Positions 5,136 through 64,000 of a DNA stretch of 64,000 nucleotides are shown here, piece after piece. Each line of letters begins with the position of its first letter. Positions within the stretch are counted from its first letter, which is position 1. Source of the stretch: Octopus sinensis (Eukaryota); assembly GCF_006345805.1 (NCBI RefSeq), contig NW_021832440.1, positions 183,145 through 247,144 of the forward strand, in the 5' to 3' direction. The notes under the pieces were generated by a model. It searched no databases and was not told where the DNA came from. It worked only from the letters and a program-made list of their open reading frames with translations. Made by a program: the position numbers and the translations under genes.

Positions 5136-5139
5136 TGGG

Positions 5140-32189: not shown

Positions 32190-32248
32190 CACTTAATTAT
32201 AAGGTGGCTACCCTATAAAACAATACATCCACACTTCTTTAGACACCA

Positions 32249-36890: not shown

Positions 36891-37300
36891 CAGGGGTGCC
36901 AAACTCATTTCGCAAGAAAAACTAAATTATTCAATCATCGCCCTTTAATTTTGGTGAGAGCTGCTTCCAGAGGATTGACATCTTTTTTAGATACAATTTT
37001 TGAGTCAGGCTGAGCTATTTGTGTAGTTCCGACTTTTATTAAAGAGGATAAATGTTCATCAGTTAGTCTTGTTCTTTGAGCAGTTTTTGTCAATTTCATA
37101 AATGATAAAATTATGTCGGAAGACATTCGGCTTGACTTCTTGAGGCGATTTCTCTCCTTGTTCAGGACGGATCTTCTTCGGCTACAAGCAGCGTGAAGTG
37201 GACGTTTAGGTATAGCCATTGCTCTTGCTTCCAGAATGATTTTCGAGAAGAAGCCAATGGCCTTGTCGAGAGACCTAAAGTTGCACAGGGTTGAACATAA
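36891..37300 (-). mobile_element. hAT (Charlie/Buster-like) 3' end fragment
   Basis: Terminal CAGGGGTGCCAAACTC at 36891 and the C-terminal motif FMKLTK..RTRLTDEHL..PD. No partner TIR found. Confidence 0.6.
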
Positions 37301-37405
37301 TTAACTTCTTTTTAATTTACATTTTTTTATTTTATAAACAAATATTTTATTTAATAAAATATTCTATATAAATTATTGTTTTTATGCTGTTGTTGTGCTC
37401 GTGAT

Positions 37406-37840
37406 ATGGTTGTTTTTATAATTGGGTAATTTTGTGAATAGTCAGAAGACGACGACAATATTGACATCTACCAAGGGAAAACATCTGGCTTATTCATAAA
37501 AGAATGTATTATATAATATTAACACTATACTAGTACGACAAATGATGTATGGCTTTGGAGATGACAAGAACCCATGTACCCAGTCAGTCACCATGCTCGA
37601 AAACCTGATTCAGTTATTTATTACTAACATTGTTATTGATGGCCATTAATTGACTTGTAGACCAGGAGAGCCCTCAAAGTTGGGACACCAGGCAAGGTGA
37701 CGGTTGATGACATTTTGTTTGTGGTCAGAAATGATCGAGTCAAATATTCCCGCGCGCGGGAATTGCTACATATGCATGCTAAACTCAAAAAGGCACGGAA
37801 GGCTTTTGAGGACAATAATTATTCGAATTTATTAAAATGA
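37406..37840 (+). CDS. TAF13: TFIID subunit 13
   Basis: LFIKELRQMMYGFGDDKNP..SVTMLENL..GKVTVDDILFVVRND..RARELL..LKKARKAFE. Introns 37409-37441, 37506-37533 and 37632-37660. Confidence 0.93.
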
Positions 37841-37999
37841 TTTTTTATTTTAAATTTTATTTGCGGTAGAAAATAGAATTTATGATCATTATTATTTAAA
37901 TTTTTGTAGAACTTAAAATGATAGAATTTAGTTTAATTTATTTAATTATTCTTTATTATGTATAAATAATTAAATATTAATTCGATTTAAAGACTACTG

Positions 38000-38900
38000 A
38001 ATAAAGTCATAGAACAGTCCGCAAAGGAAACGGTACGAGATGACTGAAAAGTTCGCCAGAAACTAAATGCAGAGGTCCCTCTAACAAAAGTATGTGCTTC
38101 CCTAAGAAGATTCATAAACCCGGAGAGATTTAAATCGGGTGAGGATAATGCGGCTCCCTTCACCAACAAATTGATAAAGTTCTACGCTGGGATCAGCAAC
38201 ATCCCCCACAGGAAATATGATAAACCATGCTTGAAGTCGTTGAAACCTCGAAAATGTCGGGACATGATAATCCTCACCCATGAGGAGGTGTCTCAGACTA
38301 TCAGAAATTTAAGAAGCACTGGCTCTTGTGGACCTGACGGAATTCCTACTATTCTGGTGAAAAACGTAGGACAGGTGGCAATATCAGCTCTTTGTCAAAT
38401 TTACAACTTCTCTATAAACAACAACTCAATACCCACATTGTGAAAAATGGCACACATTTGTCCTATTCTGAAGCCAGGGAGATCAAAAGACAACCCGGCG
38501 TCCTACAGGCCAATATCTCTTCTCTGTGTCCTATCCAAAGTTCCGGAAAAACTTATACTCAACCATCAAAGAATATCTCCCGGGTTGGATTTTCAACATT
38601 CAAAATAATCCCCAAAACCTCAGTACAATACAATAATATCCACACTAACAGGGAAGTATTCAATATTTCTGATTCCTTCACAATGTCTATAAAAGCCAAG
38701 GATTACGTCATATCCTGGACAGACTTTGACCGAGACATGCACAAATTAGGGCAAGGGGCATTTGGAATCATCTACAAAGCAGTCCACACGGAAACTCAGT
38801 TCCCAATGGCCATAAAATTACCCCACCACGTGCTTAGAACAGCTCTAACAGCATGCTCGTCTGCGGAATCTGTCGATCGGGGACTGCATAATACGGAATA
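38000..38900 (+). mobile_element. Degenerate Jockey-like LINE RT fragment with an embedded kinase-like segment
   Basis: GSCGPDGIP, PILKPG and SYRPISLL motifs. 38683-38822 instead reads like a protein-kinase N-lobe (see findings). Confidence 0.7.
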
Positions 38901-39271
38901 TTTCTATGGGACGTATCTCAGAAAAATTTTGCTATTGAAAACGGCCGTCTCTGGATTAACAATTGAAGAGAAAATTAATACATTCATACGAGTGAGAAAG
39001 TAGCTGCCATGAGACATCAGTGGAACCTGCTGGGCACATTGAAGTTGTATCCTGGTCATGAGTCTGGCGGAAGGAGGAGAAGCAAGAAGAGTTAGTAAGA
39101 TGAATTTATCAAAGTCACATATCAATTTGAATATAAAAACTTATTTTTTCAGACTTTCTTGGTCACTAATAAAAGGGAATTTAATTTGAATTAAGATGTA
39201 TTTTATTAATAATAACATTTAATAATTAAAATTTTCTCTTTTTGTTGCGCAATATTTTTAATATATATTTC

Positions 39272-42200
39272 ATGCAAGATCATAACAAATCTAAATTGTC
39301 AATTTCGTCTGTCTCGCAACAAAATGATCAGATTTATTCTCCAGCTCAATCAAACCAGATAACTCCAGAAGAAAGAGAAAACTGTCGAAAGTGGCTGTAC
39401 TAGGCCTTTTTTATTTTATTTAGCACAAATAAATTAATTGATAATAATACAGCTTACTCTTCTGAATTAACCAATATTGTAGCCCGTGAAGAAATGGAGA
39501 TATTTGAGATATCTCTTGGCAGAGTTTGCTAAAGTGAATTAATTGGTAGGTTGATTACCGAAACCGTTTGCTCGAAGTATTGCAGAGTTACAAAATAGTC
39601 CTGGAAGCATGATAAACCTGAGAGCCCACGTAGATGAAAAGAAGACCAAAAAAAGTAAGTGAATGCGATGAAATTGTGAGATGTCAGCAGTGAAGACATA
39701 AGCGAGAATTTTTGAAAGTTGTAGATATCCTGTGGGATTCCGTCCCCGATTCATTCGTTTTCCGTTACCCTGTGGATCCTGTAAAAGACATGGCTGAGGT
39801 TGATTTTTGGTCGGATTCCAGGATTATTATGACATAATAAAATCCCCAATGGATTTGTCGACACTCAAAAGCAATTTGTCTGGGAAGATGTTACACTTGT
39901 CCGTGGAAATTGATTGATGATGTTAATCTCATTTTTTCAAACGCACGGAAATACAACGGATCGAAGAGTAATATAACTCGAGCGGCAATGAGAGTAGAAA
40001 AGAGGTTACATGAGTAGTTGTCAGCAAAATTTAACGAAGTGGGAGATGAGGCGATGAATAGATTGGGCTACTGCTGTTCGAGGACTTATTTATTTAACCT
40101 TCGTGTGCTTTACTGCTGTACTTCTTTAAGTTGTCAGATTGGGGCAGATGCTGATTATTTCTCATATAAAAAGTATATATTCAAAATTTATGTAAGGGAG
40201 GAGGAGGAATACGTGTGTTGTGTCAAGTGCTTTAATTCGGCCGAGGAGCAAATCACCATATCACCTGACTCGACTCAACTCCCCAAACAAGACTTTGTCC
40301 AAGCCAAAAATAATGTAAGAGAGCCTGAGCCTTTCGTGGATTGTGTTGAGTGTGGTCGCCGTGTGCACCAAGTGTGCGTACTTTACCACGAGGAACTTTA
40401 TTCTGGGGGGTTTGTGTGTCGCATGTGTATGGAGAGTGCTTTTTCACCAAAGTTTACATGCAGAAGTAAGTCTATGTCTGATTTGTAGACCTTCCTCAAA
40501 CGAGGTTGAGCGTGTATATTGAAGAGAGAATTAATACCTTTCTACGAGCGGAGAGTGGTGGGATTGATTTTGGGACGGTCTTGGTGAGGGTCGTCTCCTC
40601 CACCATAAAAGAGTGCAGTGTGAAGCCTCTGTTCAAGTCAAAGTTCGGGGTAGACATGCCGGACGTATTTCCATACAGAGCAAAGACTCTTTTTGTGTTC
40701 CAGGTGCGTGGTGGGAGGGAACTGGCATTCTTTGCCTTCCATACACAGGAGTACGACTCGGAGTGTCCTGAACCTAATAAGCGGTATATCTATATCTTAA
40801 TTGAAGGCGTGTATACATCTCCTATCTTGACTCAGTACACTTCTTTGAGCCAAAATTCATCCGGACTCGGTGTATCACGAAATTCTAATTTCTTACATGG
40901 ATTACGTACGTAAACTGGGGTTTGGAGTGAATTGAATGTTAGTTACGCGTGGGTGCACATCTGGGCATGCCCTCCAGGTGATAGAGACGACTACATATTC
41001 TACTGCCATCCTTTTGAGCAAAAGACTCCTACGGCTAAACGTTTGATTGAATGGTACAAAGTAATTCTTAACAATGCGATAAACCAGAAGGCAATTCGTT
41101 CATACCAAGTAAGTTTGTTTTGCTAAGTGGTAGGACCTACACAGTTGTGCGCATGAGAACGCAATAACTTGTCCAACTCAAATCCCGTATATGGATGGAG
41201 ATTTCTGGCCCGCTAGAATAGAGGAAATGATCAAAAGTGACGAGGAATGTAAAAAAGAGAAAAAAAGTAGTTTGTCGGACAAGTTGATGAACATGCTTGA
41301 CAAGCAGCGAAGTGGCTTCTTTGTTATTGAATTGCATTCGAGCAGACTGAATTGTCACCTCACAACAATCGTCGACCCTGATCCTCCGATGAAGTGTGAG
41401 CTCATCGACAGTCGCGATTCTTTCCTTACCTTTTGTCGAGATAAAAACTACGAGTTCTCCACCAAAAGAAGAGCCTTTTATTCTACTCAAGCCATCGTAG
41501 TTGAGTTGTGTCTCCATCACTTGATGTTTCACTGCAACAATTGCCAAAAGGGATTGTACATGAAAGACATCATTGTAATCAGTGCAGCGACTTTGACTTG
41601 TGCCAAATTTGTGCAGAAAATAATTCGCATCCTCATCCTTTAGTCAGAATTGGCCTCGATAAAGCAACACCACTCCACCATAATTACAGATGCAGCAATA
41701 GAAAAGTGGAAGGGTAAAGTGGGACACACTGTTTTCTGCCACGACTCAAAATGTGGACGGCCTCTCTGTTCTCAGTATCGAGAATGTCTACTTCCACATT
41801 ATATGAATAACATGTGTCCTCATCGTCAGACATGCAAACTTTGTAGAATTATTATTCGAATTTATGAGACACATATTTTGGACTGCACTAACCAGCATTG
41901 TGGAGCTAAATTGTGTAATTTGTTCAAAAGACGCTTAAAAAGTATGCAAGCACGGAAACATGCAAGAGAACAAGATCAACTTTTGAGAAGAATGAACACT
42001 ATGAAAATTGCCAATGGAGATAAACAACTTCTGAAAACTAATCAGCCAATTACTCGCACACAAAATCCCTTAATGCCTAACTCTCCTTTCCTAATTCCTC
42101 AGCCCAAACGTCCTCTTCTCATTCAAACCAATTCTGCAGTACGCTTGTCTCCTATTAATTCACCCCTCCCAGACTTGAGTATCAAGAATAAGTTACGAAA

Positions 42201-42312
42201 CGGTCGATTTCCTGATTTTTCCGAATTGGAGCAGCGACTCAACTGTGAGCCCGATGCTGCTGAGAAGGAATGGACGGATAGTCAAATCATTCGCTTCTAT
42301 CAACCAGATTGA
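39272..42312 (+). CDS. CREBBP: p300/CBP histone acetyltransferase, miniaturised, copy A (several 1-bp indels)
   Basis: Degenerate KIX-like segment, bromodomain ([26 protein letters not shown]), RING/PHD ([23 protein letters not shown]), KAT11 HAT ([34 protein letters not shown]), ZZ and TAZ2. Multiple 23-24 nt introns. Confidence 0.95.
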
Positions 42313-42519
42313 TTATTTTTGTTTTAAATACATTTTATTCTTAATTCAATAATTTTGATGTTATATCATAACCTTTTGTAACATATCTGAAAATTCTTTC
42401 CCGTCGAATCTACTTTTTGTTAATTTAATATTTAATCAACGCAATCTTGATTTTTATACTTTTCGATTTTCATAGTATAGCTTTATTTAAAAATCATTCT
42501 CTCTAAAGTGTTTTAAAAT

Positions 42520-43390
42520 GTTGTCACCACTCTATCGCATGTAAATAAAATAGGGATTACCCCGACATTTGTGTTCTGAACCTTCCAGTGCACTAAAAAT
42601 TACCTCTGGATGTTATGATTTTCACTTAGATTGCTTTCAGTTCATTTGACATTAATTTTATGAAATGATCGGATGAAATTGTTTCCATAGGTCAGCCACC
42701 TCCAAGATTCATTAACATCAATTTAAGTATTCATAGACATTGGACCAAAATAGAGTGCAGATGCTTTATTTTTTAGTAAATATTCACGTTGGATTTTTAT
42801 CAAATTCAATATTGTCAATTTACTTAAATTTCAAGTATTTTATTTTCAAGATAAGAATACTGAGAAATCTTCCTTTGTTTGCCGGTTGAAATTGGATATG
42901 ACTGTCCATAAGTATTTGACAGATATTCTAATCACTTTTTCGAATTCTCAGAGCTCAATACCGGGTGAAAGTTGAATGTTTGAGGATAACTCTCTTAAAG
43001 AAAGTTGAATGTAATAGTTTTGATTTAATAACTACTTAATACGGTTTATATACAATTTAGTGTAAACTTTCAAATGGTACTTGAAAGTGAGAAATCTTGC
43101 AATCGTAGATTTTCTACTTTCAAGACCAGCAAGATTCCCACTTTTCTTGAGCAAAACTGGATTTCTAAATATACAAATACCTACAGAACAGTCATTGCTT
43201 GCTCTCGTGTCTATTAATTGCGGTCAATGATTATTGTTTTTTACCGCCGCGGGAATTGAGCCTCGAAGAGCCTAAGATCGTTTTGAGATCAAAAAACCTT
43301 CATGGCTCCTCTGAATTAGTCCCAAACGGATCATTTTCAAGAACTCTTGTCTTTAAAAAGTCGAATAAACCGAAATTATCTGACATCACA
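42520..43390 (-). pseudogene. Possible highly decayed ornithine decarboxylase/antizyme-inhibitor family gene
   Basis: Colinear weak motifs across frames: FFDLKTIL, AAVKNN (cf. YAVKCN), NDCSV (cf. FDCAS), VIRI, MNLGGG*P at 42692-42709 (cf. LDIGGGFP) and VKIITSRGNF (cf. IIAEPGRY). Confidence 0.35.
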
Positions 43391-43439
43391 GCAATTTTTT
43401 TATAATCAAATTAGTAATAACATTAAGTAATTAGTCAAC

Positions 43440-43710
43440 TTTACGACATTGTCAGGAGGGCTCTAAAGTTGGCTGGTTTCCCTTGAATACCTGTGTATTT
43501 CAGACTCTTTTGAGTTTGCTCCTCTTGCCTTTGAAACCTCAAGAATCTTCGGCAAGGCCGCGACTCAACTCCTCACTGACATTGTTAGGAGGATATCCTC
43601 GATAACAAACGACCGGAGGGAGACGAGCTGGCTCTTTCAGCGAATCTTGGTTGCTGTGCTCTGCGGAAACTGCCATTCAATACAAAATGGGGTGTCGTTG
43701 ATCTGACCCT
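43440..43710 (+). mobile_element. Internally deleted CRE-like 3' fragment
   Basis: DIVRRALKLAGFP joined to FAPLAFETS..NDRRETSWLFQRILVAVLCGNCHSI. Confidence 0.65.
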
Positions 43711-44039
43711 TAGGCTTTTGACTGTTCTTTGAGTTACTTATTTTTTCTGTTCTCATTATCATCTACAAAAAAAGCTAGAAAGTTCACTACACAAGTTATT
43801 CAAAAATTATAGTCCAATTTTACAAACATTTATTCCAGGCATTCCGATCGTCACGGCACCCGCCTTCAATTTCAACACCTGGTCAACTACATGATCTCTC
43901 TCCAATCACAATGAACCGTAAAGATAAACTGTGGACAACCCAGGCTATACAAAGTGAAGAAGGGAATATATTGTCGTCTAGGTAGACAGATCTATTGATA
44001 GGGATGCACTCCGAGGGGTGTAATGTCACCCTGGAATTA

Positions 44040-44510
44040 TTTATTCCACAGTTGAAGATTGGAACAGAAGTCCGACCCGTACTGAAATCAGATCCGCCAT
44101 ACTATACCTTAGTGTTAATCTCAACATTAAATCTCATTTCGTGAGAGTTTCGGATGTTTCAGTTACTGATGTTGCTGGAAGATACAAGACAGGGGACACG
44201 AAAATAGACCTCCTTGACAATGATAAGCAAATAACAGTCAATCATAAAAGACTCCTCCAATACAAAACGTGTTTAAATCTTGATCAAAATGACCCCAAAG
44301 CGAACCCATTACCGGAAATCTATCCAAAGAAAATATAGGAAAAAAGGTGCCACGTTTCAAAGCTTGAAGAGAAATTGATTGAATGGATGGAGGAAATGAA
44401 GTCGAAAGTTACATTCCAAAAAAGAAAGGAAACATTTTTGCGGATAGTTACAACTATGTAATTTCAAAAATTCTAATGGATTCTTGAAGATGTTTTGAGA
44501 ATTGAGTATA
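44040..44510 (+). mobile_element. Mixed relics: LTR-integrase GPY/F-like tail followed by a Tigger-like HTH fragment
   Basis: GRYKT..VNHKRLLQY, then KLEEKLIEWMEEM..NFKNSNGF. Short and degenerate. Confidence 0.4.
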
Positions 44511-44892
44511 CGGAAAATCAAACATTTATTGTCATCATTCAGACTTACCGGGACGCCAGATCGGTCAGGTCAATTATCTAAATACAAAACAAATACTTTT
44601 CCTACAAAAAGTTCTAAAAACTTAAAAAGATTTGATTCTATGGTCTCAGTTTGCCGATTTTCGATCGGCTTTACAAGATGACGTGAAACCGTACCGAGCA
44701 AAAATTTGTAATTTATTTTAGTTAAAATGCATTATTCTTTCAAATTAAAGATTTATTCAGGGGTTATAGCACAGCCGAACGGATTGCTTGCGCGTTTATT
44801 TTAGTTATTGATTATAACACCCACCCTATCTATTGGAATTATATAGCAAAAATGTGCGTGCTATACTCGAGAAATACTGTATTGTGAAAAAA

Positions 44893-45010
44893 TTGTACGA
44901 CACTGATTGTTCCCAGGCGGTCACCCAGCCAAGTACTAGAACAGCCTGTAATCGCTTAACTGCCGTGTTCGGATGGGAACGGGTATTTACGACTAAGTAT
45001 GATCGTACAG
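44893..45010 (-). rRNA. 5S: 5S rRNA gene (118 nt) with Pol III T6 terminator
   Basis: Minus strand CTGTACGATCATAC..CCCATCCGAAC..GTTAAG..CTAGTACTTGGCTGGGTGACCGCCTGGGAAC..GTCGTACAA then TTTTTT. Helix I (TGTACGAT/GTCGTACA), helix II (TAGTCG/CGATTA) and helix III (CCGT/ACGG) pair. Confidence 0.9.
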
Positions 45011-45029
45011 TTTTTCGATAATGATATCC

Positions 45030-46125
45030 TTTTTAAATAAATCTATATTCATATACATCCGAAAACTGAAAGAAAGAAAATATTGATAGAGGAAGAAATT
45101 TTGATTTTAGTAGAACTATCATCAAATAATACCCCTCATAAAAGTGCCAAAACTCTTAGCATCGAAATTAAAACTATGTTCAAACAAAAATTTCAACAAG
45201 AATAGTGTCTCGAGTTTTAAATAAGAAAGGATTATATGGCCGAGCTGCTAAAAGAAAACCTCTTTTATCCACAAAAAATATAATTTTAAGACGTGAAATT
45301 ACGAAATCATTTTTAAGCATTTCCGACGAGACATGGAAGTCGGTAATTTTTACTGATGAATGGTCTTTTGATATTTTTAATATCAATAAGCATCAAATAG
45401 TGTATAGAGAAAATGGTTCTGCATACAAAAAATGCAATATTATCCCAACTGTAAAATTCGGTGGTGGAAAAGTAATGGTCTGGGGCAGTTTCTAGTATAA
45501 CGGAGTCGGTAATCTTGTTTTTATTGATGAAATTCTTAATGGCGCAAAATATATTAATATTTTATCTAATAATATATTCGAATGTGCCAAAAAATTCGGG
45601 ATAGACTCATTTATTTTACAACAGGATAATGCACCTTGCCATAAATATAAAATGATACAAGATTATATTAAAGAAAAAAACATTATTTTACTTCAATGGC
45701 CTGCTCGATCACCGGATCTAAACCCGATAGAACATCTATGGACAGAAATGAAGAGAGAATTATCAAAAAATGTAGTCAAAAACAAAAATGAACTAAAGGA
45801 CAAATTAACAGAAATATGGAATAATATATCACCAGAATTATTGAAAAAACTAGTAATGTCTATGAAAAATAGATGTTATAAAATTTTCAGTGCAAATGGT
45901 GGACATATTAACTACTAAATGACTTGTTTTTATTTTTGTCCGGTTTTACATGTCTTAAGTAAATTGAAATTCTGCTTTAAATATTAGTTCTATAATAGTA
46001 TAATTAATAATTATTACACAATTATTATTATTAAGTAAAAATATTAAGCTTAAGTTTTTGATTTTTCATATTTAATTAATAAAATCATCAAAAATAGCTT
46101 GTCCGGTTTTCAGTGACGAGGGGTG
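45030..46125 (+). mobile_element. Tc1-family transposon, 5' truncated
   Basis: VIFTDEWSF, VKFGGGKVMVWG, QQDNAPCH and WPARSPDLNPIEHLW motifs. Right end ..cagtgacgaggggtg|TA. Confidence 0.85.
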
Positions 46126-47439
46126 TATATTAATATCTGGTATTCTTTTCAACTCCTTTTCTATCAATTATATTTTCATAAATTTCAAATAAATATGATT
46201 AAAATTACACTTTAATTGAATAAATGTTAATTTAACATGGCTAAAGATGATTGGGCTATCAAGAAATATAATTTTTTTCTACAATAATGTACGAATGACT
46301 ATCTTTTGGTAGCTTGTTTTTTCTTTGAAATGATTGATTAGCATCATTTTAATAAAATTGGTTAATCAAGATAGGAGTAAATTGACTAAACTAATAACTC
46401 TTATTGTTTCCTGTGCTGCGCAAGCTTTTTCATGATCCATGCCATCGAAAAAGTGCATTTATAATAGTACTAAAATTATTACGTCGGTGAGGAAAGACCA
46501 TTCTTTGGACTTAAAACAACAAGTTACAAAGGCCTCCCAAAGGGTACAAGTATAGAGAAATTTAGAAATTGTAACGGTTTTTTATCAACAGGCGTCGGTG
46601 AACTATTTTTGATAAATAAAAAAATAAATTTGCTCAAATATTGCGAAATCCTAGAAAAATATCTGTTACATTGAGCTACTAAATTGAATTTAACACACAA
46701 CTGGAGATTCAAACATGACAACGATTCAAAACACAAGTAAAAATGACTGCTGAATGGTAAATGTATTAGAATGACCAAGTCTATCGCCAGATTTCATTCC
46801 AATCAAACATTTGTTTGATACTCTCGCCGCTGCTAAATTTTTCTCTTCATATTAATACTCTAATTGAAACTCTCATAATTTTTATACTTAGTATTTGATA
46901 GCACACCGCATAGGTTATTGTCGAAATCGGGTCTATTAAGTTATGTGGGTGTTCATTGATATACTTAACTAACACACGACTACTTAACTGGATATACTTA
47001 ACTGGATGTCTTCCAATTTCTATTCATTTCCATTCTTTCTAGTTTCATTTATGATATTATTACTAATTAGCTCATCCTTACAAAAGTTAACAATTACTGT
47101 AAATAAAAATATCCTTTCAAGGTATTTCCTAAAACATATCAAAAATCTTTTCAACAGTCCTGGTTTATATCCAATAAGAAACTTGTCTCTAAAAAATCGT
47201 ACATCTCAAGTGATTTATATTTATAAGACAATAAAATGATCTTACAAAAATAGTGAAAAGTTCCCAAGTTTAAGGGAGAATTTTTAAGGTCAATTTTTTT
47301 CTGCAGAAGTCTTCCAATTAAATTATTAAACAGTCTAAAATTTTTGTGAAATGATAATGTAAATTTATTAAGTTTCGCGTAAATGAAAACTAAATATGCA
47401 ATTCTCTATAACAAAAGATTGGTTTCCTAATTTGTACGT

Positions 47440-47620
47440 GTGTGGACTCTTTCTCGCCTCAGAACGTTCTGATGTCCGCATCCGCCCATGGTTCTATTGC
47501 CACAACCTCGGAATGCAAAAAGATGCGGAAGTACTCCTTACTTATGGAAAAGTTCCAATTCCTCCCATTCGCAGTTGAGACTTCCGGTTCCTTGGGCGGT
47601 AAGGCAATCAGCTTCGTTCA
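47440..47620 (+). mobile_element. CRE-like C-terminal fragment
   Basis: A..SECKKMRKYSLL..FLPFAVETSGSLG. Confidence 0.6.
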
Positions 47621-47734
<114 letters not shown>

Positions 47735-47887
47735 TCAACATCAGTGAACTCGTCAATTTTAATGGCAGAACCATTAGAATTATTTAATCTAATCAGTAAC
47801 TGCGTTTCGATATTTTGTGAAAGTTCCTGAATTCCCCTTGAAATAGTTTTATTTTTTATTTTTTTCGCCGAAAGCTTTTATTGAATA

Positions 47888-54945: not shown

Positions 54946-55397
54946 TATTCAGTTTTACGTGAAACGAATTTTCAGGCGATAAGATCACAAATACAGTGCA
55001 AAAATGAACTCACTTTCTTTCGATGAGACGTATCTCAGAAAAATTTTGCTATTGAAAACGGCCGTCTTGATTATCTCTGGATTAACAATTGAAGAGATAA
55101 TTAATACATTCATACGAGTTGAGAAAACCTGCCATGAGACATCAGTGGAACCTGCTGGGCACATTGAAGTTGTATTCTGGCCCATGAGCCTGGCGGAAGG
55201 AGGAGAAGCAAAAAGAGTTGTTAAGAGGAATTTATCAAAGTCACATATCAATTTGAATATAAAAACATATTTTTTCAGACTTTCTTGGTCACTAATAAAA
55301 GGGAAATTAATTTGAATTAAGATGTATTTTATTAATAATCAAATTTAATAATTAAAATTTTCTCTTTTTGTTGCGCAATATTTTTAATATATATTTC

Positions 55398-58300
55398 ATG
55401 CAAGATCATAACAAATCTAAATTGTCAATTTCGTCTGTCTCGCAACAAAATGATCAGATTTATTCTCCAGCTCAATCAAACCAGATAACTCCAGAAGAAA
55501 GAGAAAACTGTCGAAAGTGGCTGTACTAGGCCTTTTTTATTTTATTTAGCACAAATAAATTAATTGATAATAATACAGCTTACTCTTCTGAATTAACCAA
55601 TATTGTAGCCCGTGAAGAAATGGAGATATTTGAGATATCTCTTGGCAGAGTTTGCTAAAGTGAATTAATTGGTAGGTTGATTACCGAAACCGTTTGCTCG
55701 AAGTATTGCAGAAGTTACAAAATAGTCCTGGAAGCATGATAAACCTGAGAGCCCACGTAGATGAAAAGAAGACCAAAAAAAGTAAGTGAATGCGATGAAA
55801 TTGTGAGATGTCAGCAGTGAAGACATAAGCGAGGAATTTTTGAAAGTTGTAGATATCCTGTGGGATTCCGTCCCCGATTCATTCGTTTTCCGTTACCCTG
55901 TGGATCCTGTAAAAGACATGGCTGAGGTTGATTTTTGGTCGGATTCCAGGATTATTATGACATAATAAAATCCCCAATGGATTTGTCGACACTCAAAAGC
56001 AATTTGTCTGGGAAGATGTACACTTGTCCGTGGAAATTGATTGATGATGTTAATCTCATTTTTTCAAACGCACGGAAATACAACGGATCGAAGAGTAATA
56101 TAACTCGAGCGGCAATGAGAGTAGAAAAGAGGTTACATGAGTAGTTGTCAGCAAAATTTAACGAAGTGGGAGATGAGGCGATGAATAGATTGGGCTACTG
56201 CTGTTCGAGGACTTATTTATTTAACCTTCGTGTGCTTTACTGCTGTACTTCTTTAAGTTGTCAGATTGGGGCAGATGCTGATTATTTCTCATATAAAAAG
56301 TATATATTCAAAATTTATGTAAGGGAGGAGAGGAATACGTGTGTTGTGTCAAGTGCTTTAATTCGGCCGAGGAGCAAATCACCATATCACCTGACTCGAC
56401 TCAACTCCCCAAACAAGACTTTGTCCAAGCCAAAAATAATGTAAGAGAGCCTGAGCCTTTCGTGGATTGTGTTGAGTGTGGTCGCCGTGTGCACCAAGTG
56501 TGCGTACTTTACCACGAGGAACTTTATTCTGGGGGGTTTGTGTGTCGCATGTGTATGGAGAGTGCTTTTTCACCAAAGTTTACATGCAGAAGTAAGTCTA
56601 TGTCTGATTTGTAGACCTTCCTCAAACGAGGTTGAGCGTGTATATTGAAGAGAGAATTAATACCTTTCTACGAGCGGAGAGTGGTGGGATTGATTTTGGG
56701 ACGGTCTTGGTGAGGGTCGTCTCCTCCACCATAAAAGAGTGCAGTGTGAAGCCTCTGTTCAAGTCAAAGTTCGGGGTAGACATGCCGGACGTATTTCCAT
56801 ACAGAGCAAAGACTCTTTTTGTGTTCCAGGTGCGTGGGGGAGGGAACTGGCATTCTTTGCCTTCCATACACAGGAGTACGACTCGGAGTGTCCTGAACCT
56901 AATAAGCGGTATATCTATATCTTAATTGAAGGCGTGTATACATCTCCTATCTTGACTCAGTACACTTCTTTGAGCCAAAATTCATCCGGACTCGGGTGTA
57001 TCACGAAATTCTAATTTCTTACATGGATTACGTACGTAAACTGGGGTTTGGAGTGAATTGAATGTTAGTTACGCGTGGGTGCACATCTGGGCATGCCCTC
57101 CAGGTGATAGAGACGACTACATATTCTACTGCCATCCTTTTGAGCAAAAGACTCCTACGGCTAAACGTTTGATTGAATGGTACAAAGTAATTCTTAACAA
57201 TGCGATAAACCAGAAGGCAATTCGTTCATACCAAGTAAGTTTGTTTTGCTAAGTGGTAGGACCTACACAGTTGTGCGCATGAGAACGCAATAACTTGTCC
57301 AACTCAAATCCCGTATATGGATGGAGATTTCTGGCCCGCTAGAATAGAGGAAATGATCAAAAGTGACGAGGAATGTAAAAAAGAGAAAAAAAGTAGTTTG
57401 TCGGACAAGTTGATGAACATGCTTGACAAGCAGCGAAGTGGCTTCTTTGTTATTGAATTGCATTCGAGCAGACTGAATTGTCACCTCACAACAATCGTCG
57501 ACCCTGATCCTCCGATGAAGTGTGAGCTCATCGACAGTCGCGATTCTTTCCTTACCTTTTGTCGAGATAAAAACTACGAGTTCTCCACCAAAAGAAGAGC
57601 CTTTTATTCTACTCAATCCATTGTAGTTGAGTTGTGTCTCCATCACTTGATGTTTCACTGCAACAATTGCCAAAAGGAGATTGTACATGAAAGACATCAC
57701 TGTAATCAATGCAGCGACTTTGACTTGTGCCAAATTTGTGCAGAAAATAATTCGCATCCTCATCCTTTAGTCAGAATTGGCCTCGATAAAGCAGACACCT
57801 CCACCATAATTACAGATGCAGCAATAGAAAAGTGGAAGGGTAAAGTGGGACACACTGTTTTCTGCCACGACTCAAAATGTGGACGGCCTCTCTGTTCTCA
57901 GTATCGAGAATGTCTACTTCCACATTATATGAATAACATGTGTCCTCATCGTCAGACATGCAAACTTTGTAGAATTATTATTCGAATTATGAGACACATA
58001 TTTTGGACTGCACTAACCAGCATTGTGGAGCTAAATTGTGTAATTTGTTCAAAAGACGCTTAAAAAGTATGCAAGCACGGAAACATGCAAGAGAACAAGA
58101 TCAACTTTTGAGAAGAATGAACACTATGAAAATTGCCAATGGAGATAAACAACTTCTGAAAACTAATCAGCCAATTACGCGCACACAAAATCCCTTAATG
58201 CCTAACTCTCCTTTCCTAATTCCTCAGCCCAAACGTCCTCTTCTCATTCAAACCAATTCTGCAGTACGCTTGTCTCCTATTAATTCACCCCTCCCAGACT

Positions 58301-58437
58301 TGAGTATCAAGAATAAGTTACGAAACGGTCGATTTTCTGATTTTTCCGAATTGGAGCAGCGACTCAACTGTGAGCCCGATGCTGCTGAGAAGGAATGGAC
58401 GGATAGTCAAATCATTCGCTTCTATCAACCAGATTGA
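55398..58437 (+). CDS. CREBBP: p300/CBP, miniaturised, copy B (different 1-bp indels from copy A)
   Basis: Same domains as 39272-42312; frameshifts at ~56330, ~56838 and ~57988 where copy A is in frame. Confidence 0.95.
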
Positions 58438-61019
58438 TTATTTTTTGTTTTAAATACATTTTATTCTTAATTCAATAATTTTGATGTTATATCATAACCT
58501 TTTGTAACATATCTGAAAATTCTTTTCCCGTCGAATCTACTTTTTTGTTAATTTAATATTTAATCAACGCAATCTTGATTTTTATACTTTTCGATTTTCA
58601 TAGTATAGCTTTATTTAAAAATCATTCTCTCTAAAGTGTTTTAAAATGTTGTCACCACTCTATCGCATGTAAATAAAATAGGGATTACCCCGACATTTGT
58701 GTTCTGAACCTTCCAGTGCACTAAAAATTACCTCTGGATGTTATGATTTTCACTTAGATTGCTTTCAGTTCATTTGACATTAATTTTATGAAATGATCGG
58801 ATGAAATTGTTTCCATAGGTCAGCCACCTCCAAGATTCATTAACATCAATTTAAGTATTCATAGACATTGGACCAAAATAGAGTGCAGATGCTTTATTTT
58901 TTAGTAAATATTCACGTTGGATTTTTATCAAATTCAATATTGTCAATTTACTTAAATTTCAAGTATTTTATTTTCAAGATAAGAATACTGAGAAATCTTC
59001 CTTTGTTTGCCGGTTGAAATTGGATATGACTGTCCATAAGTATTTGACAGATATTCTAATCACTTTTTCGAATTCTCAGAGCTCAATACCGGGTGAAAGT
59101 TGAATGTTTGAGGATAACTCTCTTAAAGAAAGTTGAATGTAATAGTTTTGATTTAATAACTACTTAATACGGTTTATATACAATTTAGTGTAAACTTTCA
59201 AATGGTACTTGAAAGTGAGAAATCTTGCAATCGTAGATTTTCTACTTTCAAGACCAGCAAGATTCCCACTTTTCTTGAGCAAAACTGGATTTCTAAATAT
59301 ACAAATACCTACAGAACAGTCATTGCTTGCTCTCGTGTCTATTAATTGCGGTCAATGATTATTGTTTTTTACCGCCGCGGGAATTGAGCCTCGAAGAGCC
59401 TAAGATCGTTTTGAGATCAAAAAACCTTCATGGCTCCTCTGAATTAGTCCCAAACGGATCATTTTCAAGAACTCTTGTCTTTAAAAAGTCGAATAAACCG
59501 AAATTATCTGACATCACAGCAATTTTTTTATAATCAAATTAGTAATAACATTAAGTAATTAGTCAACTTTACGACATTGTCAGGAGGGCTCTAAAGTTGG
59601 CTGGTTTCCCTTGAATACCTGTGTATTTCAGACTCTTTTGAGTTTGCTCCTCTTGCCTTTGAAACCTCAAGAATCTTCGGCAAGGCCGCGACTCAACTCC
59701 TCACTGACATTGTTAGGAGGATATCCTCGATAACAAACGACCGGAGGGAGACGAGCTGGCTCTTTCAGCGAATCTTGGTTGCTGTGCTCTGCGGAAACTG
59801 CCATTCAATACAAAATGGGGTGTCGTTGATCTGACCCTTAGGCTTTTGACTGTTCTTTGAGTTACTTATTTTTTCTGTTCTCATTATCATCTACAAAAAA
59901 AGCTAGAAAGTTCACTACACAAGTTATTCAAAAATTATAGTCCAATTTTACAAACATTTATTCCAGGCATTCCGATCGTCACGGCACCCGCCTTCAATTT
60001 CAACACCTGGTCAACTACATGATCTCTCTCCAATCACAATGAACCGTAAAGATAAACTGTGGACAACCCAGGCTATACAAAGTGAAGAAGGGAATATATT
60101 GTCGTCTAGGTAGACAGATCTATTGATAGGGATGCACTCCGAGGGGTGTAATGTCACCCTGGAATTATTTATTCCACAGTTGAAGATTGGAACAGAAGTC
60201 CGACCCGTACTGAAATCAGATCCGCCATACTATACCTTAGTGTTAATCTCAACATTAAATCTCATTTCGTGAGAGTTTCGGATGTTTCAGTTACTGATGT
60301 TGCTGGAAGATACAAGACAGGGGACACGAAAATAGACCTCCTTGACAATGATAAGCAAATAACAGTCAATCATAAAAGACTCCTCCAATACAAAACGTGT
60401 TTAAATCTTGATCAAAATGACCCCAAAGCGAACCCATTACCGGAAATCTATCCAAAGAAAATATAGGAAAAAAGGTGCCACGTTTCAAAGCTTGAAGAGA
60501 AATTGATTGAATGGATGGAGGAAATGAAGTCGAAAGTTACATTCCAAAAAAGAAAGGAAACATTTTTGCGGATAGTTACAACTATGTAATTTCAAAAATT
60601 CTAATGGATTCTTGAAGATGTTTTGAGAATTGAGTATACGGAAAATCAAACATTTATTGTCATCATTCAGACTTACCGGGACGCCAGATCGGTCAGGTCA
60701 ATTATCTAAATACAAAACAAATACTTTTCCTACAAAAAGTTCTAAAAACTTAAAAAGATTTGATTCTATGGTCTCAGTTTGCCGATTTTCGATCGGCTTT
60801 ACAAGATGACGTGAAACCGTACCGAGCAAAAATTTGTAATTTATTTTAGTTAAAATGCATTATTCTTTCAAATTAAAGATTTATTCAGGGGTTATAGCAC
60901 AGCCGAACGGATTGCTTGCGCGTTTATTTTAGTTATTGATTATAACACCCACCCTATCTATTGGAATTATATAGCAAAATGTGCGTGCTATACTCGAGAA
61001 ATACTGTATTGTGAAAAAA

Positions 61020-61137
61020 TTGTACGACACTGATTGTTCCCAGGCGGTCACCCAGCCAAGTACTAGAACAGCCTGTAATCGCTTAACTGCCGTGTTCGGA
61101 TGGGAACGGGTATTTACGACTAAGTATGATCGTACAG
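61020..61137 (-). rRNA. 5S: 5S rRNA gene, copy B
   Basis: Appears identical to 44893-45010, with the T6 terminator. Confidence 0.9.
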
Positions 61138-61156
61138 TTTTTCGATAATGATATCC

Positions 61157-62252
61157 TTTTTAAATAAATCTATATTCATATACATCCGAAAACTGAAAGA
61201 AAGAAAATATTGATAGAGGAAGAAATTTTGATTTTAGTAGAACTATCATCAAATAATACCCCTCATAAAAGTGCCAAAACTCTTAGCATCGAAATTAAAA
61301 CTATGTTCAAACAAAAATTTCAACAAGAATAGTGTCTCGAGTTTTAAATAAGAAAGGATTATATGGCCGAGCTGCTAAAAGAAAACCTCTTTTATCCACA
61401 AAAAATATAATTTTAAGACGTGAAATTACGAAATCATTTTTAAGCATTTCCGACGAGACATGGAAGTCGGTAATTTTTACTGATGAATGGTCTTTTGATA
61501 TTTTTAATATCAATAAGCATCAAATAGTGTATAGAGAAAATGGTTCTGCATACAAAAAATGCAATATTATCCCAACTGTAAAATTCGGTGGTGGAAAAGT
61601 AATGGTCTGGGGCAGTTTCTAGTATAACGGAGTCGGTAATCTTGTTTTTATTGATGAAATTCTTAATGGCGCAAAATATATTAATATTTTATCTAATAAT
61701 ATATTCGAATGTGCCAAAAAATTCGGGATAGACTCATTTATTTTACAACAGGATAATGCACCTTGCCATAAATATAAAATGATACAAGATTATATTAAAG
61801 AAAAAAACATTATTTTACTTCAATGGCCTGCTCGATCACCGGATCTAAACCCGATAGAACATCTATGGACAGAAATGAAGAGAGAATTATCAAAAAATGT
61901 AGTCAAAAACAAAAATGAACTAAAGGACAAATTAACAGAAATATGGAATAATATATCACCAGAATTATTGAAAAAACTAGTAATGTCTATGAAAAATAGA
62001 TGTTATAAAATTTTCAGTGCAAATGGTGGACATATTAACTACTAAATGACTTGTTTTTATTTTTGTCCGGTTTTACATGTCTTAAGTAAATTGAAATTCT
62101 GCTTTAAATATTAGTTCTATAATAGTATAATTAATAATTATTACACAATGATTATTATTAAGTAAAAATATTAAGCTTAAGTTTTTGATTTTTCATATTT
62201 AATTAATAAAATCATCAAAAATAGCTTGTCCGGTTTTCAGTGACGAGGGGTG
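61157..62252 (+). mobile_element. Tc1-family transposon, 5' truncated, copy B
   Basis: Duplicate of 45030-46125. Confidence 0.85.
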
Positions 62253-63748
62253 TATATTAATATCTGGTATTCTTTTCAACTCCTTTTCTATCAATTATAT
62301 TTTCATAAATTTCAAATAAATATGATTAAAATTACACTTTAATTGAATAAATGTTAAATTTAACATGGCTAAAGATGATTGGGCTATCAAGAAATATAAT
62401 TTTTTTCTACAATAATGTACGAATGACTATCTTTTGGTAGCTTGTTTTTTCTTTGAAATGATTGATTAGCATCATTTTAATAAAATTGGTTAATCAAGAT
62501 AGGAGTAAATTGACTAAACTAATAACTCTTATTGTTTCCTGTGCTGCGCAAGCTTTTTCATGATCCATGCCATCGAAAAAGTGCATTTATAATAGTACTA
62601 AAATTATTACGTCGGTGAGGAAAGACCATTCTTTGGACTTAAAACAACAAGTTACAAAGGCCTCCCAAAGGGTACAAGTATAGAGAAATTTAGAAATTGT
62701 AACGGTTTTTTATCAACAGGCGTCGGTGAACTATTTTTGATAAATAAAAAAATAAATTTGCTCAAATATTGCGAAATCCTAGAAAAATATCTGTTACATT
62801 GAGCTACTAAATTGAATTTAACACACAACTGGAGATTCAAACATGACAACGATTCAAAACACAAGTAAAAATGACTGCTGAATGGTAAATGTATTAGAAT
62901 GACCAAGTCTATCGCCAGATTTCATTCCAATCAAACATTTGTTTGATACTCTCGCCGCTGCTAAATTTTTCTCTTCATATTAATACTCTAATTGAAACTC
63001 TCATAATTTTTATACTTAGTATTTGATAGCACACCGCATAGGTTATTGTCGAAATCGGGTCTATTAAGTTATGTGGGTGTTCATTGATATACTTAACTAA
63101 CACACGACTACTTAACTGGATATACTTAACTGGATGTCTTCCAATTTCTATTCATTTCCATTCTTTCTAGTTTCATTTATGATATTATTACTAATTAGCT
63201 CATCCTTACAAAAGTTAACAATTACTGTAAATAAAAATATCCTTTCAAGGTATTTCCTAAAACATATCAAAAATCTTTTCAACAGTCCTGGTTTATATCC
63301 AATAAGAAACTTGTCTCTAAAAAATCGTACATCTCAAGTGATTTATATTTATAAGACAATAAAATGATCTTACAAAAATAGTGAAAAGTTCCCAAGTTTA
63401 AGGGAGAATTTTTAAGGTCAATTTTTTTCTGCAGAAGTCTTCCAATTAAATTATTAAACAGTCTAAAATTTTTGTGAAATGATAATGTAAATTTATTAAG
63501 TTTCGCGTAAATGAAAACTAAATATGCAATTCTCTATAACAAAAGATTGGTTTCCTAATTTGTACGTGTGTGGACTCTTTCTCGCCTCAGAACGTTCTGA
63601 TGTCCGCATCCGCCCATGGTTCTATTGCCACAACCTCGGAATGCAAAAAGATGCGGAAGTACTCCTTACTTATGGAAAAGTTCCAATTCCTCCCATTCGC
63701 AGTTGAGACTTCCGGTTCCTTGGGCGGTAAGGCAATCAGCTTCGTTCA

Positions 63749-63862
<114 letters not shown>

Positions 63863-64000
63863 TCAACATCAGTGAACCCGTCAATTTTAATGGCAAAACC
63901 ATAAGAATTATGTAATCTAATCAGTAACTGCGTTTCGATATTTTGTGAAAGTTCCCGAATTCGCCTTGAAATAGTTTTATTTTTTATTTTTTTCGCCGAA

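What the first reader, a model, noticed from the sequence alone, without database searches (positions are those of the whole stretch)
39272..42312. Miniaturised p300/CBP that has lost almost all of its autoinhibitory loop
Seen: the whole gene fits in 3041 bp including introns, so the protein is under ~1000 aa. It keeps bromo, RING/PHD, HAT, ZZ and TAZ2, with catalytic motifs YLDS, HIWACPP and EWY. Between DFWP and FFV there are only 35 residues ([35 protein letters not shown]). Known: human p300/CBP are ~2400 aa, and this interval is ~85 aa (recalled) containing the lysine-rich autoinhibitory loop, whose deletion or autoacetylation activates the enzyme. I see no TAZ1 and no Q-rich/NCBD tail. 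Inference: this may be a naturally loop-less, possibly constitutively active or differently regulated KAT3 in a reduced parasite genome.
Basis: partly seen in the sequence, partly recalled or inferred. Interest (0 to 1): 0.75.

Follow-up and report, generated by a model that had tools for sequence, protein, structure and literature searches.

The report
Compact p300/CBP gene, loop nearly gone
A dicyemid-type parasite genome carries two near-identical copies of a very small p300/CBP acetyltransferase gene whose lysine-rich self-inhibiting loop is cut from about 61 to 12 residues; both copies are frameshifted as assembled, and a related genome keeps a normal-loop version, so this is a moderately interesting natural variant, not proof of an always-on enzyme.

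Summary
Window 39272-42312 (+) is a p300/CBP (KAT3) homologue (E 1e-167 to the human cores) with bromodomain, RING, PHD, HAT, ZZ and TAZ2. It has ten GT..AG introns of 23-33 nt. The DFWP-to-FFV interval is 35 aa in one open exon, against 84 in human and a median of 85.5 in 70 homologues.

- Copy A cannot be read as it stands; it needs six single-base corrections.
- A second copy lies at 55398-58437, inside a 9-kb repeat that is 99.4% identical. It is in frame at those six sites but broken at three others. Choosing the in-frame copy at each site gives a clean 930-aa ORF. The first 2.2 kb holds six indels and no substitutions, so assembly error is the likelier cause.
- The closest relative sits on a dicyemid-like contig filed under Octopus sinensis. 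It keeps TAZ1 and a 76-aa lysine-rich loop, so the window gene is probably a stripped-down paralogue.

No TAZ1, KIX or NCBD was found anywhere in the 64 kb. Loops of 34-40 aa occur in four other homologues, so they are rare but not unique. A KKEKK remnant, RING and TAZ2 remain. Constitutive activity is untested.

The parts
39272..42312 (+). Copy A of the compact p300/CBP (KAT3) gene: 11 exons, 10 tiny introns, from the ATG to the stop at 42310-42312. This is the finding's gene.
   Evidence: As assembled, the spliced reading stops at codon 93.
55398..58437 (+). Copy B of the same gene. It has the same 10 introns, starting at 55517, 55650, 55782, 55927, 56121, 56300, 56592, 56909, 57046 and 57235.
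   Evidence: As assembled, the spliced reading stops at codon 296.
38901..47872 (.). Repeat unit 1 of a segmental duplication of at least 9 kb. It carries copy A.
   Evidence: blastn of the window against itself: 99.37% identity over 8992 bp, 28 mismatches, 20 gap openings.
55018..64000 (.). Repeat unit 2. It carries copy B and runs to the end of the window.
39391..39423 (+). Intron 1 (33 nt, GTGGCT..TAG). This is the least certain part of the model. It removes the only in-frame stop between the ATG and exon 2.
   Evidence: inference from reading frame only.
39524..39549 (+). Intron 2 (26 nt).
39655..39680 (+). Intron 3 (26 nt).
39799..39821 (+). Intron 4 (23 nt), inside the bromodomain.
   Evidence: the alignment to human p300 runs straight across the splice.
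39994..40017 (+). Intron 5 (24 nt).
40173..40196 (+). Intron 6 (24 nt).
40466..40488 (+). Intron 7 (23 nt).
40784..40806 (+). Intron 8 (23 nt).
40920..40942 (+). Intron 9 (23 nt).
41109..41133 (+). Intron 10 (25 nt), after ..RSYQ. The relative L001 has an intron at the same position.
39733..39987 (+). Bromodomain (aa 127-203 of the 930-aa model).
   Evidence: Pfam PF00439, E 1.2e-17; coordinates.
40054..40170 (+). Atypical RING of CBP/p300 (aa 218-256).
   Evidence: Pfam PF06001, E 1.6e-8.
40324..40431 (+). PHD of p300 type (aa 300-335).
   Evidence: Pfam PF23570, E 8.2e-13.
40465..41211 (+). HAT domain up to DFWP (aa 347-564), including YLDS, RT..VYHEIL, HIWACPP and EWY.
   Evidence: Pfam PF08214, E 2.4e-42; alignment to human p300/CBP.
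41212..41316 (+). The 35-aa DFWP-to-FFV interval, [35 protein letters not shown]. In copy B it lies at 57338-57442 and is identical.
   Evidence: (no A/B difference between 40869 and 41490).
41239..41274 (+). The 12-residue remnant [12 protein letters not shown]. It occupies the place of the roughly 61-residue lysine-rich loop of human p300, the segment that crystallised cores replace with SGGSG.
   Evidence: Comparison with P0001 (loop-deleted construct, 28-aa interval) and P0003 (native, 84 aa).
41317..41505 (+). C-terminal part of the HAT domain (FFVIELH..IVDPDP..DSRDSFL..).
41521..41636 (+). ZZ zinc finger (aa 668-706).
   Evidence: Pfam PF00569, E 2.6e-7.
41716..41937 (+). TAZ2 (aa 733-806). 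It is divergent, but the three H-C-C-C motifs are kept.
   Evidence: phmmer alignment to human; tblastn E 5e-8; Pfam zf-TAZ only E 0.062.
41938..42309 (+). C-terminal tail of 124 aa with no recognisable NCBD/IBiD or Q-rich region.
39585..39585 (+). Copy A frameshift 1: one A missing relative to B.
39705..39705 (+). Copy A frameshift 2: one G missing relative to B.
39891..39891 (+). Copy A frameshift 3: one extra T, in the bromodomain.
40868..40868 (+). Copy A frameshift 4: one G missing, in ..IRT/VYHEIL of the HAT domain.
41551..41551 (+). Copy A frameshift 5: one A missing, in ZZ.
41667..41672 (+). Copy A frameshift 6: a complex difference with a net +1, between ZZ and TAZ2.
56329..56329 (+). 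Copy B frameshift 1: one G missing (equivalent to A 40203).
56837..56837 (+). Copy B frameshift 2: one T missing (equivalent to A 40712), in the HAT domain.
57986..57986 (+). Copy B frameshift 3: one T missing (equivalent to A 41861), in TAZ2.

Best explanation
What it is. The window comes from a dicyemid-type parasite genome. It holds two near-identical copies, inside a segmental duplication of at least 9 kb, of a compact KAT3 (p300/CBP) gene of about 930 codons with ten introns of 23-33 nt.

Domain content. The protein is reduced to bromodomain, RING, PHD, HAT, ZZ and TAZ2. It has no TAZ1, no detectable KIX and no NCBD or Q-rich tail. The lysine-rich autoinhibitory loop is cut to 12 residues ([12 protein letters not shown]).

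Frameshifts. The nine single-base frameshifts, six in copy A and three in copy B, are most likely indel errors of a long-read-derived assembly. The underlying gene is then intact.

How it probably works (inferred, not shown).
- The enzyme is catalytically competent, because the acetyl-CoA, catalytic and acidic substrate-groove residues are kept.
- It can still be restrained by RING and TAZ2.
- It can no longer use a long, flexible, poly-lysine pseudosubstrate loop that must be trans-autoacetylated. That layer of control is weak or absent.
- It can be recruited only through the bromodomain, ZZ and TAZ2.

Origin. It is probably a divergent second paralogue. A related dicyemid-like genome encodes a compact but complete CBP with TAZ1 and a 76-aa lysine-rich loop.
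For: Identity and domains.

Gene model: choosing the in-frame copy at each of the nine indels and removing ten GT..AG introns gives one ORF of 930 codons that ends at the same stop.

Loop:
- It is 35 aa in a stop-free exon and identical in both copies.
- Human has 84 aa; 70 homologues have a median of 85.5 and an interquartile range of 76-96.

Conserved catalytic and groove residues: [28 protein letters not shown] (E1505 is D here) and DSRDSF (the D1625/D1628 equivalents).

No TAZ1, KIX or NCBD:
- tblastn of the human domains against all 64 kb found nothing, while the TAZ2 control scored E 5e-8.
- Pfam on the + strand of 33000-39300 and 42313-44890 found nothing relevant.
- tblastn with the relative's own TAZ1 and KIX-like stretches found nothing.
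- An unrelated TAF13 gene lies 1.4 kb upstream on the same strand.

Frameshifts are technical:
- In the first 2.2 kb of the gene the copies differ by six 1-nt indels and no substitutions.
- Over the central 8.5 kb there are 14 indels against about 9 substitutions, and the flank indels are all homopolymer-length changes.
- At every indel one copy keeps the frame that matches p300.
- Of the six simple substitutions between the copies, four look synonymous by eye.
- A published dicyemid assembly with matching GC (36.7%) and repeat content merged Illumina and PacBio RS II/Falcon assemblies (PMC6736024).

Relative with a full loop and TAZ1: L001, which encodes XP_029655242.1.

The two genomes are close: the window's LINE reverse transcriptase is 86-88% identical to 'Octopus sinensis' proteins on 200-490-kb contigs. 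The two KAT3 genes are only 44-51% identical.
Against: - No transcript or read evidence is available, and neither assembled copy is intact.
- Indel density is about three times higher in the coding sequence than in the 5.4-kb flank. Simple random error does not explain this.
- About 1.7 kb of other conserved coding sequence in the window (TAF13, SURF4-like, RER1-like) shows at most one suspect junction.
- Catalytic competence and loss of loop control are inferred from sequence only.
- A KKEKK cluster remains and could still be acetylated.
- Paralogy against deep orthology is not settled, because the source genome beyond this window could not be searched.
Confidence: 0.55

Rival explanations
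1. Both copies are real pseudogenes. A duplicated, fast-evolving KAT3 paralogue that had already shed TAZ1, KIX and the loop is now decaying, and the frameshifts are true mutations.
For: - Both copies are frameshifted at several sites.
- Indels are denser in the coding sequence than in the flank.
- A related genome has a complete CBP that could cover the function.
- The locus is rich in transposable-element ORFs and rearranged.
Against: - Six indels with no substitutions in 2.2 kb is not a natural mutation spectrum.
- There are no in-frame stops or lost catalytic residues once the frames are followed.
- Substitutions between the copies are mostly synonymous by eye.
- Pseudogene status does not explain the excess of indels over the flank either.
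Confidence: 0.2
2. The gene is the single KAT3 orthologue of its species. The octopus-assembly relative (L001) is then the orthologue from a deeply diverged dicyemid, and this whole lineage, not a spare paralogue, runs on a KAT3 without TAZ1, KIX or a long loop.
For: - The window gene and L001 are each other's closest relatives, 51% against 42-46% to human in the C-terminal HAT-ZZ block.
- They share derived motifs and the intron after RSYQ.
- Only one short repeat (90 bp, 84%) is shared at the DNA level between the window and L001.
- The window's SURF4-like protein found no near-identical protein in the database.
Against: - LINE reverse transcriptases are 86-88% identical between the two genomes. 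That fits congeners, for which 44-51% identity in a conserved enzyme core would be far too low for orthologues.
- CBP paralogue expansions are documented in platyhelminths (bioRxiv 10.1101/2020.09.08.287045).
Confidence: 0.2
3. The short loop is an assembly artefact: the A-rich, low-complexity DNA that encodes a lysine-rich loop collapsed during assembly.
For: The region contains A6 and A7 runs, and the assembly clearly has indel problems.
Against: - Both copies agree base for base across the interval and stay in frame.
- An in-frame loss of about 125-150 nt in two separately assembled copies is unlikely.
- The flanking helices align to human without gaps.
Confidence: 0.03

Closest known systems
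Human p300/CBP catalytic core (bromodomain-RING-PHD-HAT-ZZ-TAZ2; for example PDB 8HAG, 8HAL, 4BHW, 6GYR)
   Same: Same domain order. E 1e-167. About 48% identity over HAT-ZZ. The catalytic and acidic-groove residues, RING, ZZ and the three zinc sites of TAZ2 are conserved.
   Different: 930 aa against about 2400 aa. No NRID, TAZ1, KIX, NCBD or Q-rich regions. The DFWP-to-FFV interval is 35 aa against 84. The position equivalent to K1499 is not lysine. Ten introns of 23-33 nt.
Engineered loop-deleted p300 cores used for crystallography and cryo-EM (loop replaced by SGGSG; P0001 = PDB 7W9V chain K; 4BHW type)
   Same: The interval is 28 aa in the construct and 35 aa here. The flanking helices align residue for residue. 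In this respect the natural protein resembles the deletion construct.
   Different: The natural remnant is [12 protein letters not shown], with four lysines, rather than a Gly/Ser linker. Its activity has not been tested. The human deletion is known from the literature to relieve autoinhibition (PMC12547938).
XP_029655242.1 'CREBBP-like [Octopus sinensis]' on contig VCDQ01001334.1 (locus L001), a dicyemid-like sequence
   Same: It is the nearest relative, at 44-51% identity. It shares tiny introns, the motifs FFVIELH, RSYQ and TFCRD[KR]NYEFS[ST]KRRA, and the intron after RSYQ. It is also compact, about 4 kb from TAZ1 to the stop.
   Different: It keeps TAZ1 (Pfam zf-TAZ, E 4.6e-5) and a weak KIX-like stretch (KIX_2, E 0.17). 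Its loop interval is 76 aa and lysine-rich, and it is split by a 28-nt intron.
Other natural short-loop KAT3 homologues: Stegodyphus dumicola CBP-like isoform X3 (37 aa); Mesorhabditis spiculigera (49-52 aa); unnamed Logan, ENA, JGI and EukProt proteins (34-50 aa)
   Same: They have short DFWP-to-FFV intervals with conserved flanks.
   Different: They are unrelated lineages. Most are fragments or isoform models. None has been studied. Lysine content varies from 1 to 11.
Platyhelminth CBP paralogue families (2 in Schistosoma mansoni, 5 in planarians)
   Same: They are a precedent for KAT3 duplication and functional divergence in spiralians, including parasites.
   Different: Those paralogues are reported to keep most of the conserved domains. 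Loop length was not examined in that work.

Membership tests
KAT3 (p300/CBP) acetyltransferases | HAT_KAT11 catalytic domain with the p300 catalytic and cofactor residues (YLDS, R-T, HIWACPP, EWY) | tested here: met
   Pfam PF08214, E 2.4e-42. Residue-level alignment to human p300/CBP. Motif coordinates.
KAT3 (p300/CBP) acetyltransferases | Bromodomain, atypical RING and PHD immediately N-terminal to the HAT domain | tested here: met
   PF00439 (E 1.2e-17), PF06001 (E 1.6e-8) and PF23570 (E 8.2e-13), in that order.
KAT3 (p300/CBP) acetyltransferases | ZZ and TAZ2 zinc fingers C-terminal to the HAT domain | tested here: met
   ZZ: PF00569, E 2.6e-7. TAZ2: aligned to human, tblastn E 5e-8, three H-C-C-C motifs read directly from the sequence. 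Pfam zf-TAZ reaches only E 0.062, below its cut-off.
KAT3 (p300/CBP) acetyltransferases | Lysine-rich autoinhibitory loop of about 60 residues inside the HAT domain | tested here: not met
   Twelve residues with four lysines stand in its place. The interval is 35 aa, against 84 in human and a median of 85.5 in 70 homologues.
Metazoan full-length CBP/p300 architecture | TAZ1 domain | tested here: not met
   No hit in 64 kb with human TAZ1 or with the relative's TAZ1, apart from the gene's own TAZ2. No Pfam hit on the + strand of 33000-39300. The N-terminus before the bromodomain is only about 125 aa.
Metazoan full-length CBP/p300 architecture | KIX domain | tested here: not met
   No Pfam, phmmer or BLASTP signal. 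A resemblance of aa 28-95 to KIX helices seen by eye scores at noise level: 13.9-15.8 bits against a shuffled median of 16.5.
Metazoan full-length CBP/p300 architecture | NCBD/IBiD and Q-rich C-terminal region | tested here: not met
   The tail after TAZ2 is 124 aa. There is no tblastn or Pfam signal in the gene or in the 2.6 kb downstream.
Functional (expressed, intact) gene | Uninterrupted reading frame in the genome sequence | tested here: inconclusive
   Copy A stops at codon 93 and copy B at codon 296. A composite of the two is intact over 930 codons. The pattern of differences points to assembly indel errors.
Functional (expressed, intact) gene | Transcription, and splicing as modelled | not testable with these tools
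   No reads or transcripts of the source organism were reachable. No protein closer than 57% identity exists in the searched collections.
Autoacetylation-independent ('constitutively active') KAT3 | HAT activity without a lag and without stimulation by prior autoacetylation | not testable with these tools
   Needs a biochemical assay.

The most novel reading that the evidence does not exclude
Dicyemids keep two kinds of KAT3. One is a compact but complete CBP. The other is a 'core-only' paralogue, duplicated next to 5S rRNA genes, that has shed every transcription-factor docking domain except TAZ2 and nearly all of the pseudosubstrate loop. It would work as a free-running acetyltransferase that does not depend on autoacetylation: a natural equivalent of the loop-deleted p300 used in structural work.
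Probability: 0.15. Interest if true: 0.55.

Novelty: new variant of a known kind. Interest (0 to 1): 0.35.

Why it matters
The autoinhibitory loop is central to current models of p300/CBP activation: trans-autoacetylation after transcription-factor dimerisation, enhancer-RNA binding, and bromodomain binding to the acetylated loop. A natural enzyme that keeps the whole catalytic core, RING and TAZ2 but has only 12 loop residues would show how much regulation survives without the loop, especially with a long-loop relative in the same lineage for comparison. It would also give a small, possibly well-behaved core for biochemistry.

The practical lessons are more immediate. The gene cannot be taken from this assembly as it stands. 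Dicyemid sequences are also filed as octopus proteins in public databases.

Tried and rejected
- KIX remnant. By eye, aa 28-95 (ITPEER.., NIVA.., FE....R.DY...LLE.L.KLQ) resembled KIX helices 1-3. phmmer against PDB, BLASTP against human KIX, Pfam and tblastn against the relative's KIX-like stretch with a shuffle control all gave noise. Dropped.
- Hidden upstream exons. Nothing was found with human or L001 TAZ1/KIX queries anywhere in the window. TAF13 lies in between.
- Rescue of the frameshifts by alternative splice sites. I checked this by hand for copy B at 56329 and copy A at 39585, 39705 and 39891. No GT..AG combination restores the frame.
- A 23-nt GT..AG stretch inside the loop (41236-41258). 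Splicing it out would shift the frame into a stop, so it is not an intron.
- Independent sequence of this gene. No protein above 57% identity was found among the 5.8 billion clusters, and none above 47% among the 1.84 billion representatives.
- Orthologue yardstick. A SURF4-like query gave no hits at all. That search was wasted and does not bear on the ortholog-versus-paralog question.
- Supplements of the D. japonicum genome paper hold nothing on KAT11, TAZ, KIX or CREB.
I used the exon ORF 57260-58060 instead. For the same reason I did not attempt a structure prediction of the whole HAT domain.
- Frameshift survey of other genes. Only about 1.7 kb (TAF13, SURF4-like, RER1-like) could be checked, which is too little to measure the assembly's error rate.
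Full report
**What is at the coordinates**

Window 39272-42312 (+) encodes a clear p300/CBP (KAT3) homologue.
- A hand-spliced draft matched the solved human CBP and p300 cores at E 1.6e-167 and 2.6e-167. The alignment runs from the bromodomain to TAZ2.
- The HAT-ZZ part is 48% identical to the human p300 core.
- Exons are separated by GT..AG introns of 23-33 nt.
- Pfam on the reconstructed protein finds Bromodomain, RING_CBP-p300, PHD_P300, HAT_KAT11 and ZZ in the canonical order.
- TAZ2 is too divergent for Pfam (E 0.062). It aligns to human TAZ2 and keeps all three H-C-C-C zinc motifs.

**The loop**

DFWP (41200-41211) and FFV (41317-41325) lie in one stop-free exon, 41134-41640. Native human p300 has 84 residues there. 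The crystallisation constructs, in which the loop is replaced by SGGSG, have 28.

With the flanking helices aligned without gaps, the window protein has 12 residues, [12 protein letters not shown], where human p300 has about 61.

I took every database homologue that spans both anchors (n = 70). The search that supplied most of them used a short-loop query and ranks by similarity, so the sample is biased towards short loops.
- Median 85.5 aa; interquartile range 76-96.
- 61 of 70 are at least 65 aa.
- 8 are 50 aa or less, and 4 are 40 aa or less.
- The short ones are a spider isoform model (Stegodyphus dumicola, 37 aa), a nematode (Mesorhabditis spiculigera, 49-52 aa) and unnamed eukaryotic fragments.

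The window's loop length is therefore at the extreme of the distribution but not unique.

A tblastn of the human core showed a second copy near 55.8-58 kb. The segments 38901-47872 and 55018-64000 (the window end) are 99.37% identical, with 28 mismatches and 20 gap openings.

| | Copy A (39272-42312) | Copy B (55398-58437) |
|---|---|---|
| Stop after intron removal | codon 93 | codon 296 |
| 1-nt indels that break the frame | 39585, 39705, 39891, 40868, 41551, 41667-72 | 56329, 56837, 57986 |

At each of the nine indels within the gene, one copy keeps the frame that matches p300. Taking the in-frame copy at each site gives a single ORF of 930 codons, from the ATG to the shared stop. The loop region is identical in both copies.

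**Are the frameshifts real?**

I think they are mostly technical, for these reasons.
- In the first 2.2 kb of the gene the copies differ by six 1-nt indels and no substitutions.
- Over the central 8.5 kb there are 14 indels against about 9 substitutions.
- The indels in the flank are all homopolymer-length changes.
- Even with a generous natural ratio of one indel to four substitutions, six indels out of six events has probability of about 6e-5. This is my own calculation on the data.
- Four of the six simple substitutions look synonymous by eye.
- No catalytic residue is lost.

The published Dicyema japonicum assembly merged Illumina/Platanus and PacBio RS II/Falcon assemblies, and I found no mention of polishing in the text. 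Its GC content is 36.7% and its repeat content 48.9%, with many LINE copies (PMC6736024). The window matches this description. I cannot prove the window comes from that assembly.

Two things argue against a purely technical cause.
- Indels are about three times denser in the coding sequence than in the 5.4-kb flank.
- The little other conserved coding sequence I could check, about 1.7 kb of TAF13, SURF4-like and RER1-like genes, shows at most one odd junction.

Twin pseudogenes therefore stay a live rival, at about 0.2.

**Missing domains**

- The N-terminus before the bromodomain is about 125 aa. Intron 1 is modelled from reading frame alone.
- Human TAZ1, KIX and NCBD find nothing in 64 kb on either strand, while the TAZ2 control is found at E 5e-8.
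- Pfam on all three + frames of 33000-39300 and 42313-44890 finds only a TAF13 gene at 37533-37828 and a weak kinase fragment.
- The TAZ1 and KIX-like stretches of the closest relative find nothing either.
- A resemblance of aa 28-95 to KIX, seen by eye, did not survive testing.

**Organism and closest relative**

Introns under 30 nt are reported in animals only for dicyemids and myxobolid myxozoans (PMC13644364; PMC6543705).

The best hit in 1.84 billion representative proteins is XP_029655242.1, 'CREBBP-like [Octopus sinensis]' (47% identity). Its locus, L001, lies on the 382-kb contig VCDQ01001334.1. It has 35% GC and the same tiny introns. It is therefore dicyemid-like DNA inside an octopus assembly, and octopuses are the hosts of dicyemids.

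The window's intact LINE reverse transcriptase (3621-5144, minus strand) is 86-88% identical to two other 'Octopus sinensis' proteins on contigs of 203 and 491 kb. The window's organism is thus close to that dicyemid.

**What the relative shows**

In L001 the gene has:
- a TAZ1 about 700 nt upstream of the bromodomain (Pfam zf-TAZ, E 4.6e-5);
- a weak KIX-like stretch (KIX_2, E 0.17);
- a DFWP-to-FFV interval of 76 aa, rich in lysine (..KRPNSKTEAKKSKKTKSKIRRK..) and split by a 28-nt intron.

Compact size is therefore a trait of the lineage. Loss of TAZ1 and of the loop is specific to the window gene.

The two genes are each other's nearest relatives, but only 44-51% identical, while the transposable elements of the two genomes are 86-88% identical. 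I therefore favour ancient paralogy, at roughly 60:40 over deep orthology. CBP paralogue families are known in platyhelminths.

**Mechanism**

What is shown is the domain content, the conserved catalytic and acidic-groove residues, and the 12-residue remnant.

Established knowledge from PMC12547938 and from the abstract of PMC10475075:
- The hypoacetylated loop, with 13 lysines, occupies the substrate site.
- Trans-autoacetylation raises activity 4- to 10-fold.
- RING and TAZ2 also block the pocket.

Inference: with so short a connection the pseudosubstrate mechanism is weak or absent, while control by RING and TAZ2 and recruitment through the bromodomain, ZZ and TAZ2 remain. 'Constitutively active' goes beyond the evidence.

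**Verdict**

- The gene is a new variant of a known kind, in a locus of doubtful sequence quality.
- Interest is moderate (0.35).

Noticed in passing
window 44892-45010 (-) and 61019-61137 (-): There is a full-length 5S rRNA gene (Rfam, 99.5 bits) in each copy of the 9-kb repeat, about 2.6 kb downstream of each p300/CBP copy. Related fragments lie at about 24762-24838 (87% to a stretch that overlaps the 5S gene) and 1908-1996 (89% to nearby flank).
   Followed up: partly
locus L001 (GCA_006345805.1, contig VCDQ01001334.1, 203144-225038); proteins P0121, P0271, P0272: Contigs of 200-490 kb in the Octopus sinensis assembly look like dicyemid DNA. L001 itself has 35% GC and 25-28-nt introns. The contigs that carry P0271 and P0272 are inferred only from LINE proteins 86-88% identical to the window's. 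Their gene models are filed as octopus proteins (for example XP_029655242.1, LOC115229755, LOC115228431). The CREBBP-like model is truncated because tiny introns were not modelled.
   Followed up: partly
L001 10110-10460: In the relative, a 28-nt intron sits inside the lysine-rich loop, within the stretch that is missing from the window gene. The deletion may have removed this intron together with the coding sequence on both sides.
   Followed up: no
window 37533-37828 (+): There is a TAF13 (TFIID 18 kDa) gene in two exons with one tiny intron, 45-61% identical to human. It lies about 1.4 kb upstream of copy A on the same strand.
   Followed up: partly
window 10970-11440 (+), junction 11219-11244: An RER1-like gene. 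The intron after ..EFKFW restores the frame only if it ends in TG instead of AG (gtaaatttgtttatttttttttg, 23 nt). This is either a non-canonical acceptor or a base error next to a T9 run.
   Followed up: partly
window 22044-22861 (+): A SURF4-like gene in at least three exons, 31-38% identical to human. It is so divergent that a word-indexed search of 5.8 billion protein clusters returned nothing.
   Followed up: partly
window 18408-19773 / 31892-33259; 23322-24733 / 53296-54703; 26145-28014 / 49767-51638: Older segmental duplications (94%, 97% and 97% identity), in a different order in the two halves of the window. By eye they carry an inositol-phosphate-kinase-like gene, an unidentified ORF set, and chitinase-like (GH18-type) ORFs on the minus strand. 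The families were not tested.
   Followed up: no
window 3621-5144 (-), 12185-13456 (-), 30295-31188 (+), 45172-45915 (+) and 61299-62042 (+): The window holds many transposable-element ORFs: an uninterrupted 508-aa LINE reverse-transcriptase ORF, a second reverse-transcriptase ORF of 424 aa, and Tc1/mariner-type transposase fragments. One of these fragments lies inside each 9-kb repeat.
   Followed up: partly
window 38680-39003 (+): A short protein-kinase-like fragment (GQGAFG..AIK; Pfam Pkinase, E 0.025) ends 270 nt before copy A's ATG. The boundary of the 9-kb duplication (38901) falls inside it, and the first 300 bp of the repeat are about 6% diverged, against about 0.1% further in.
   Followed up: no
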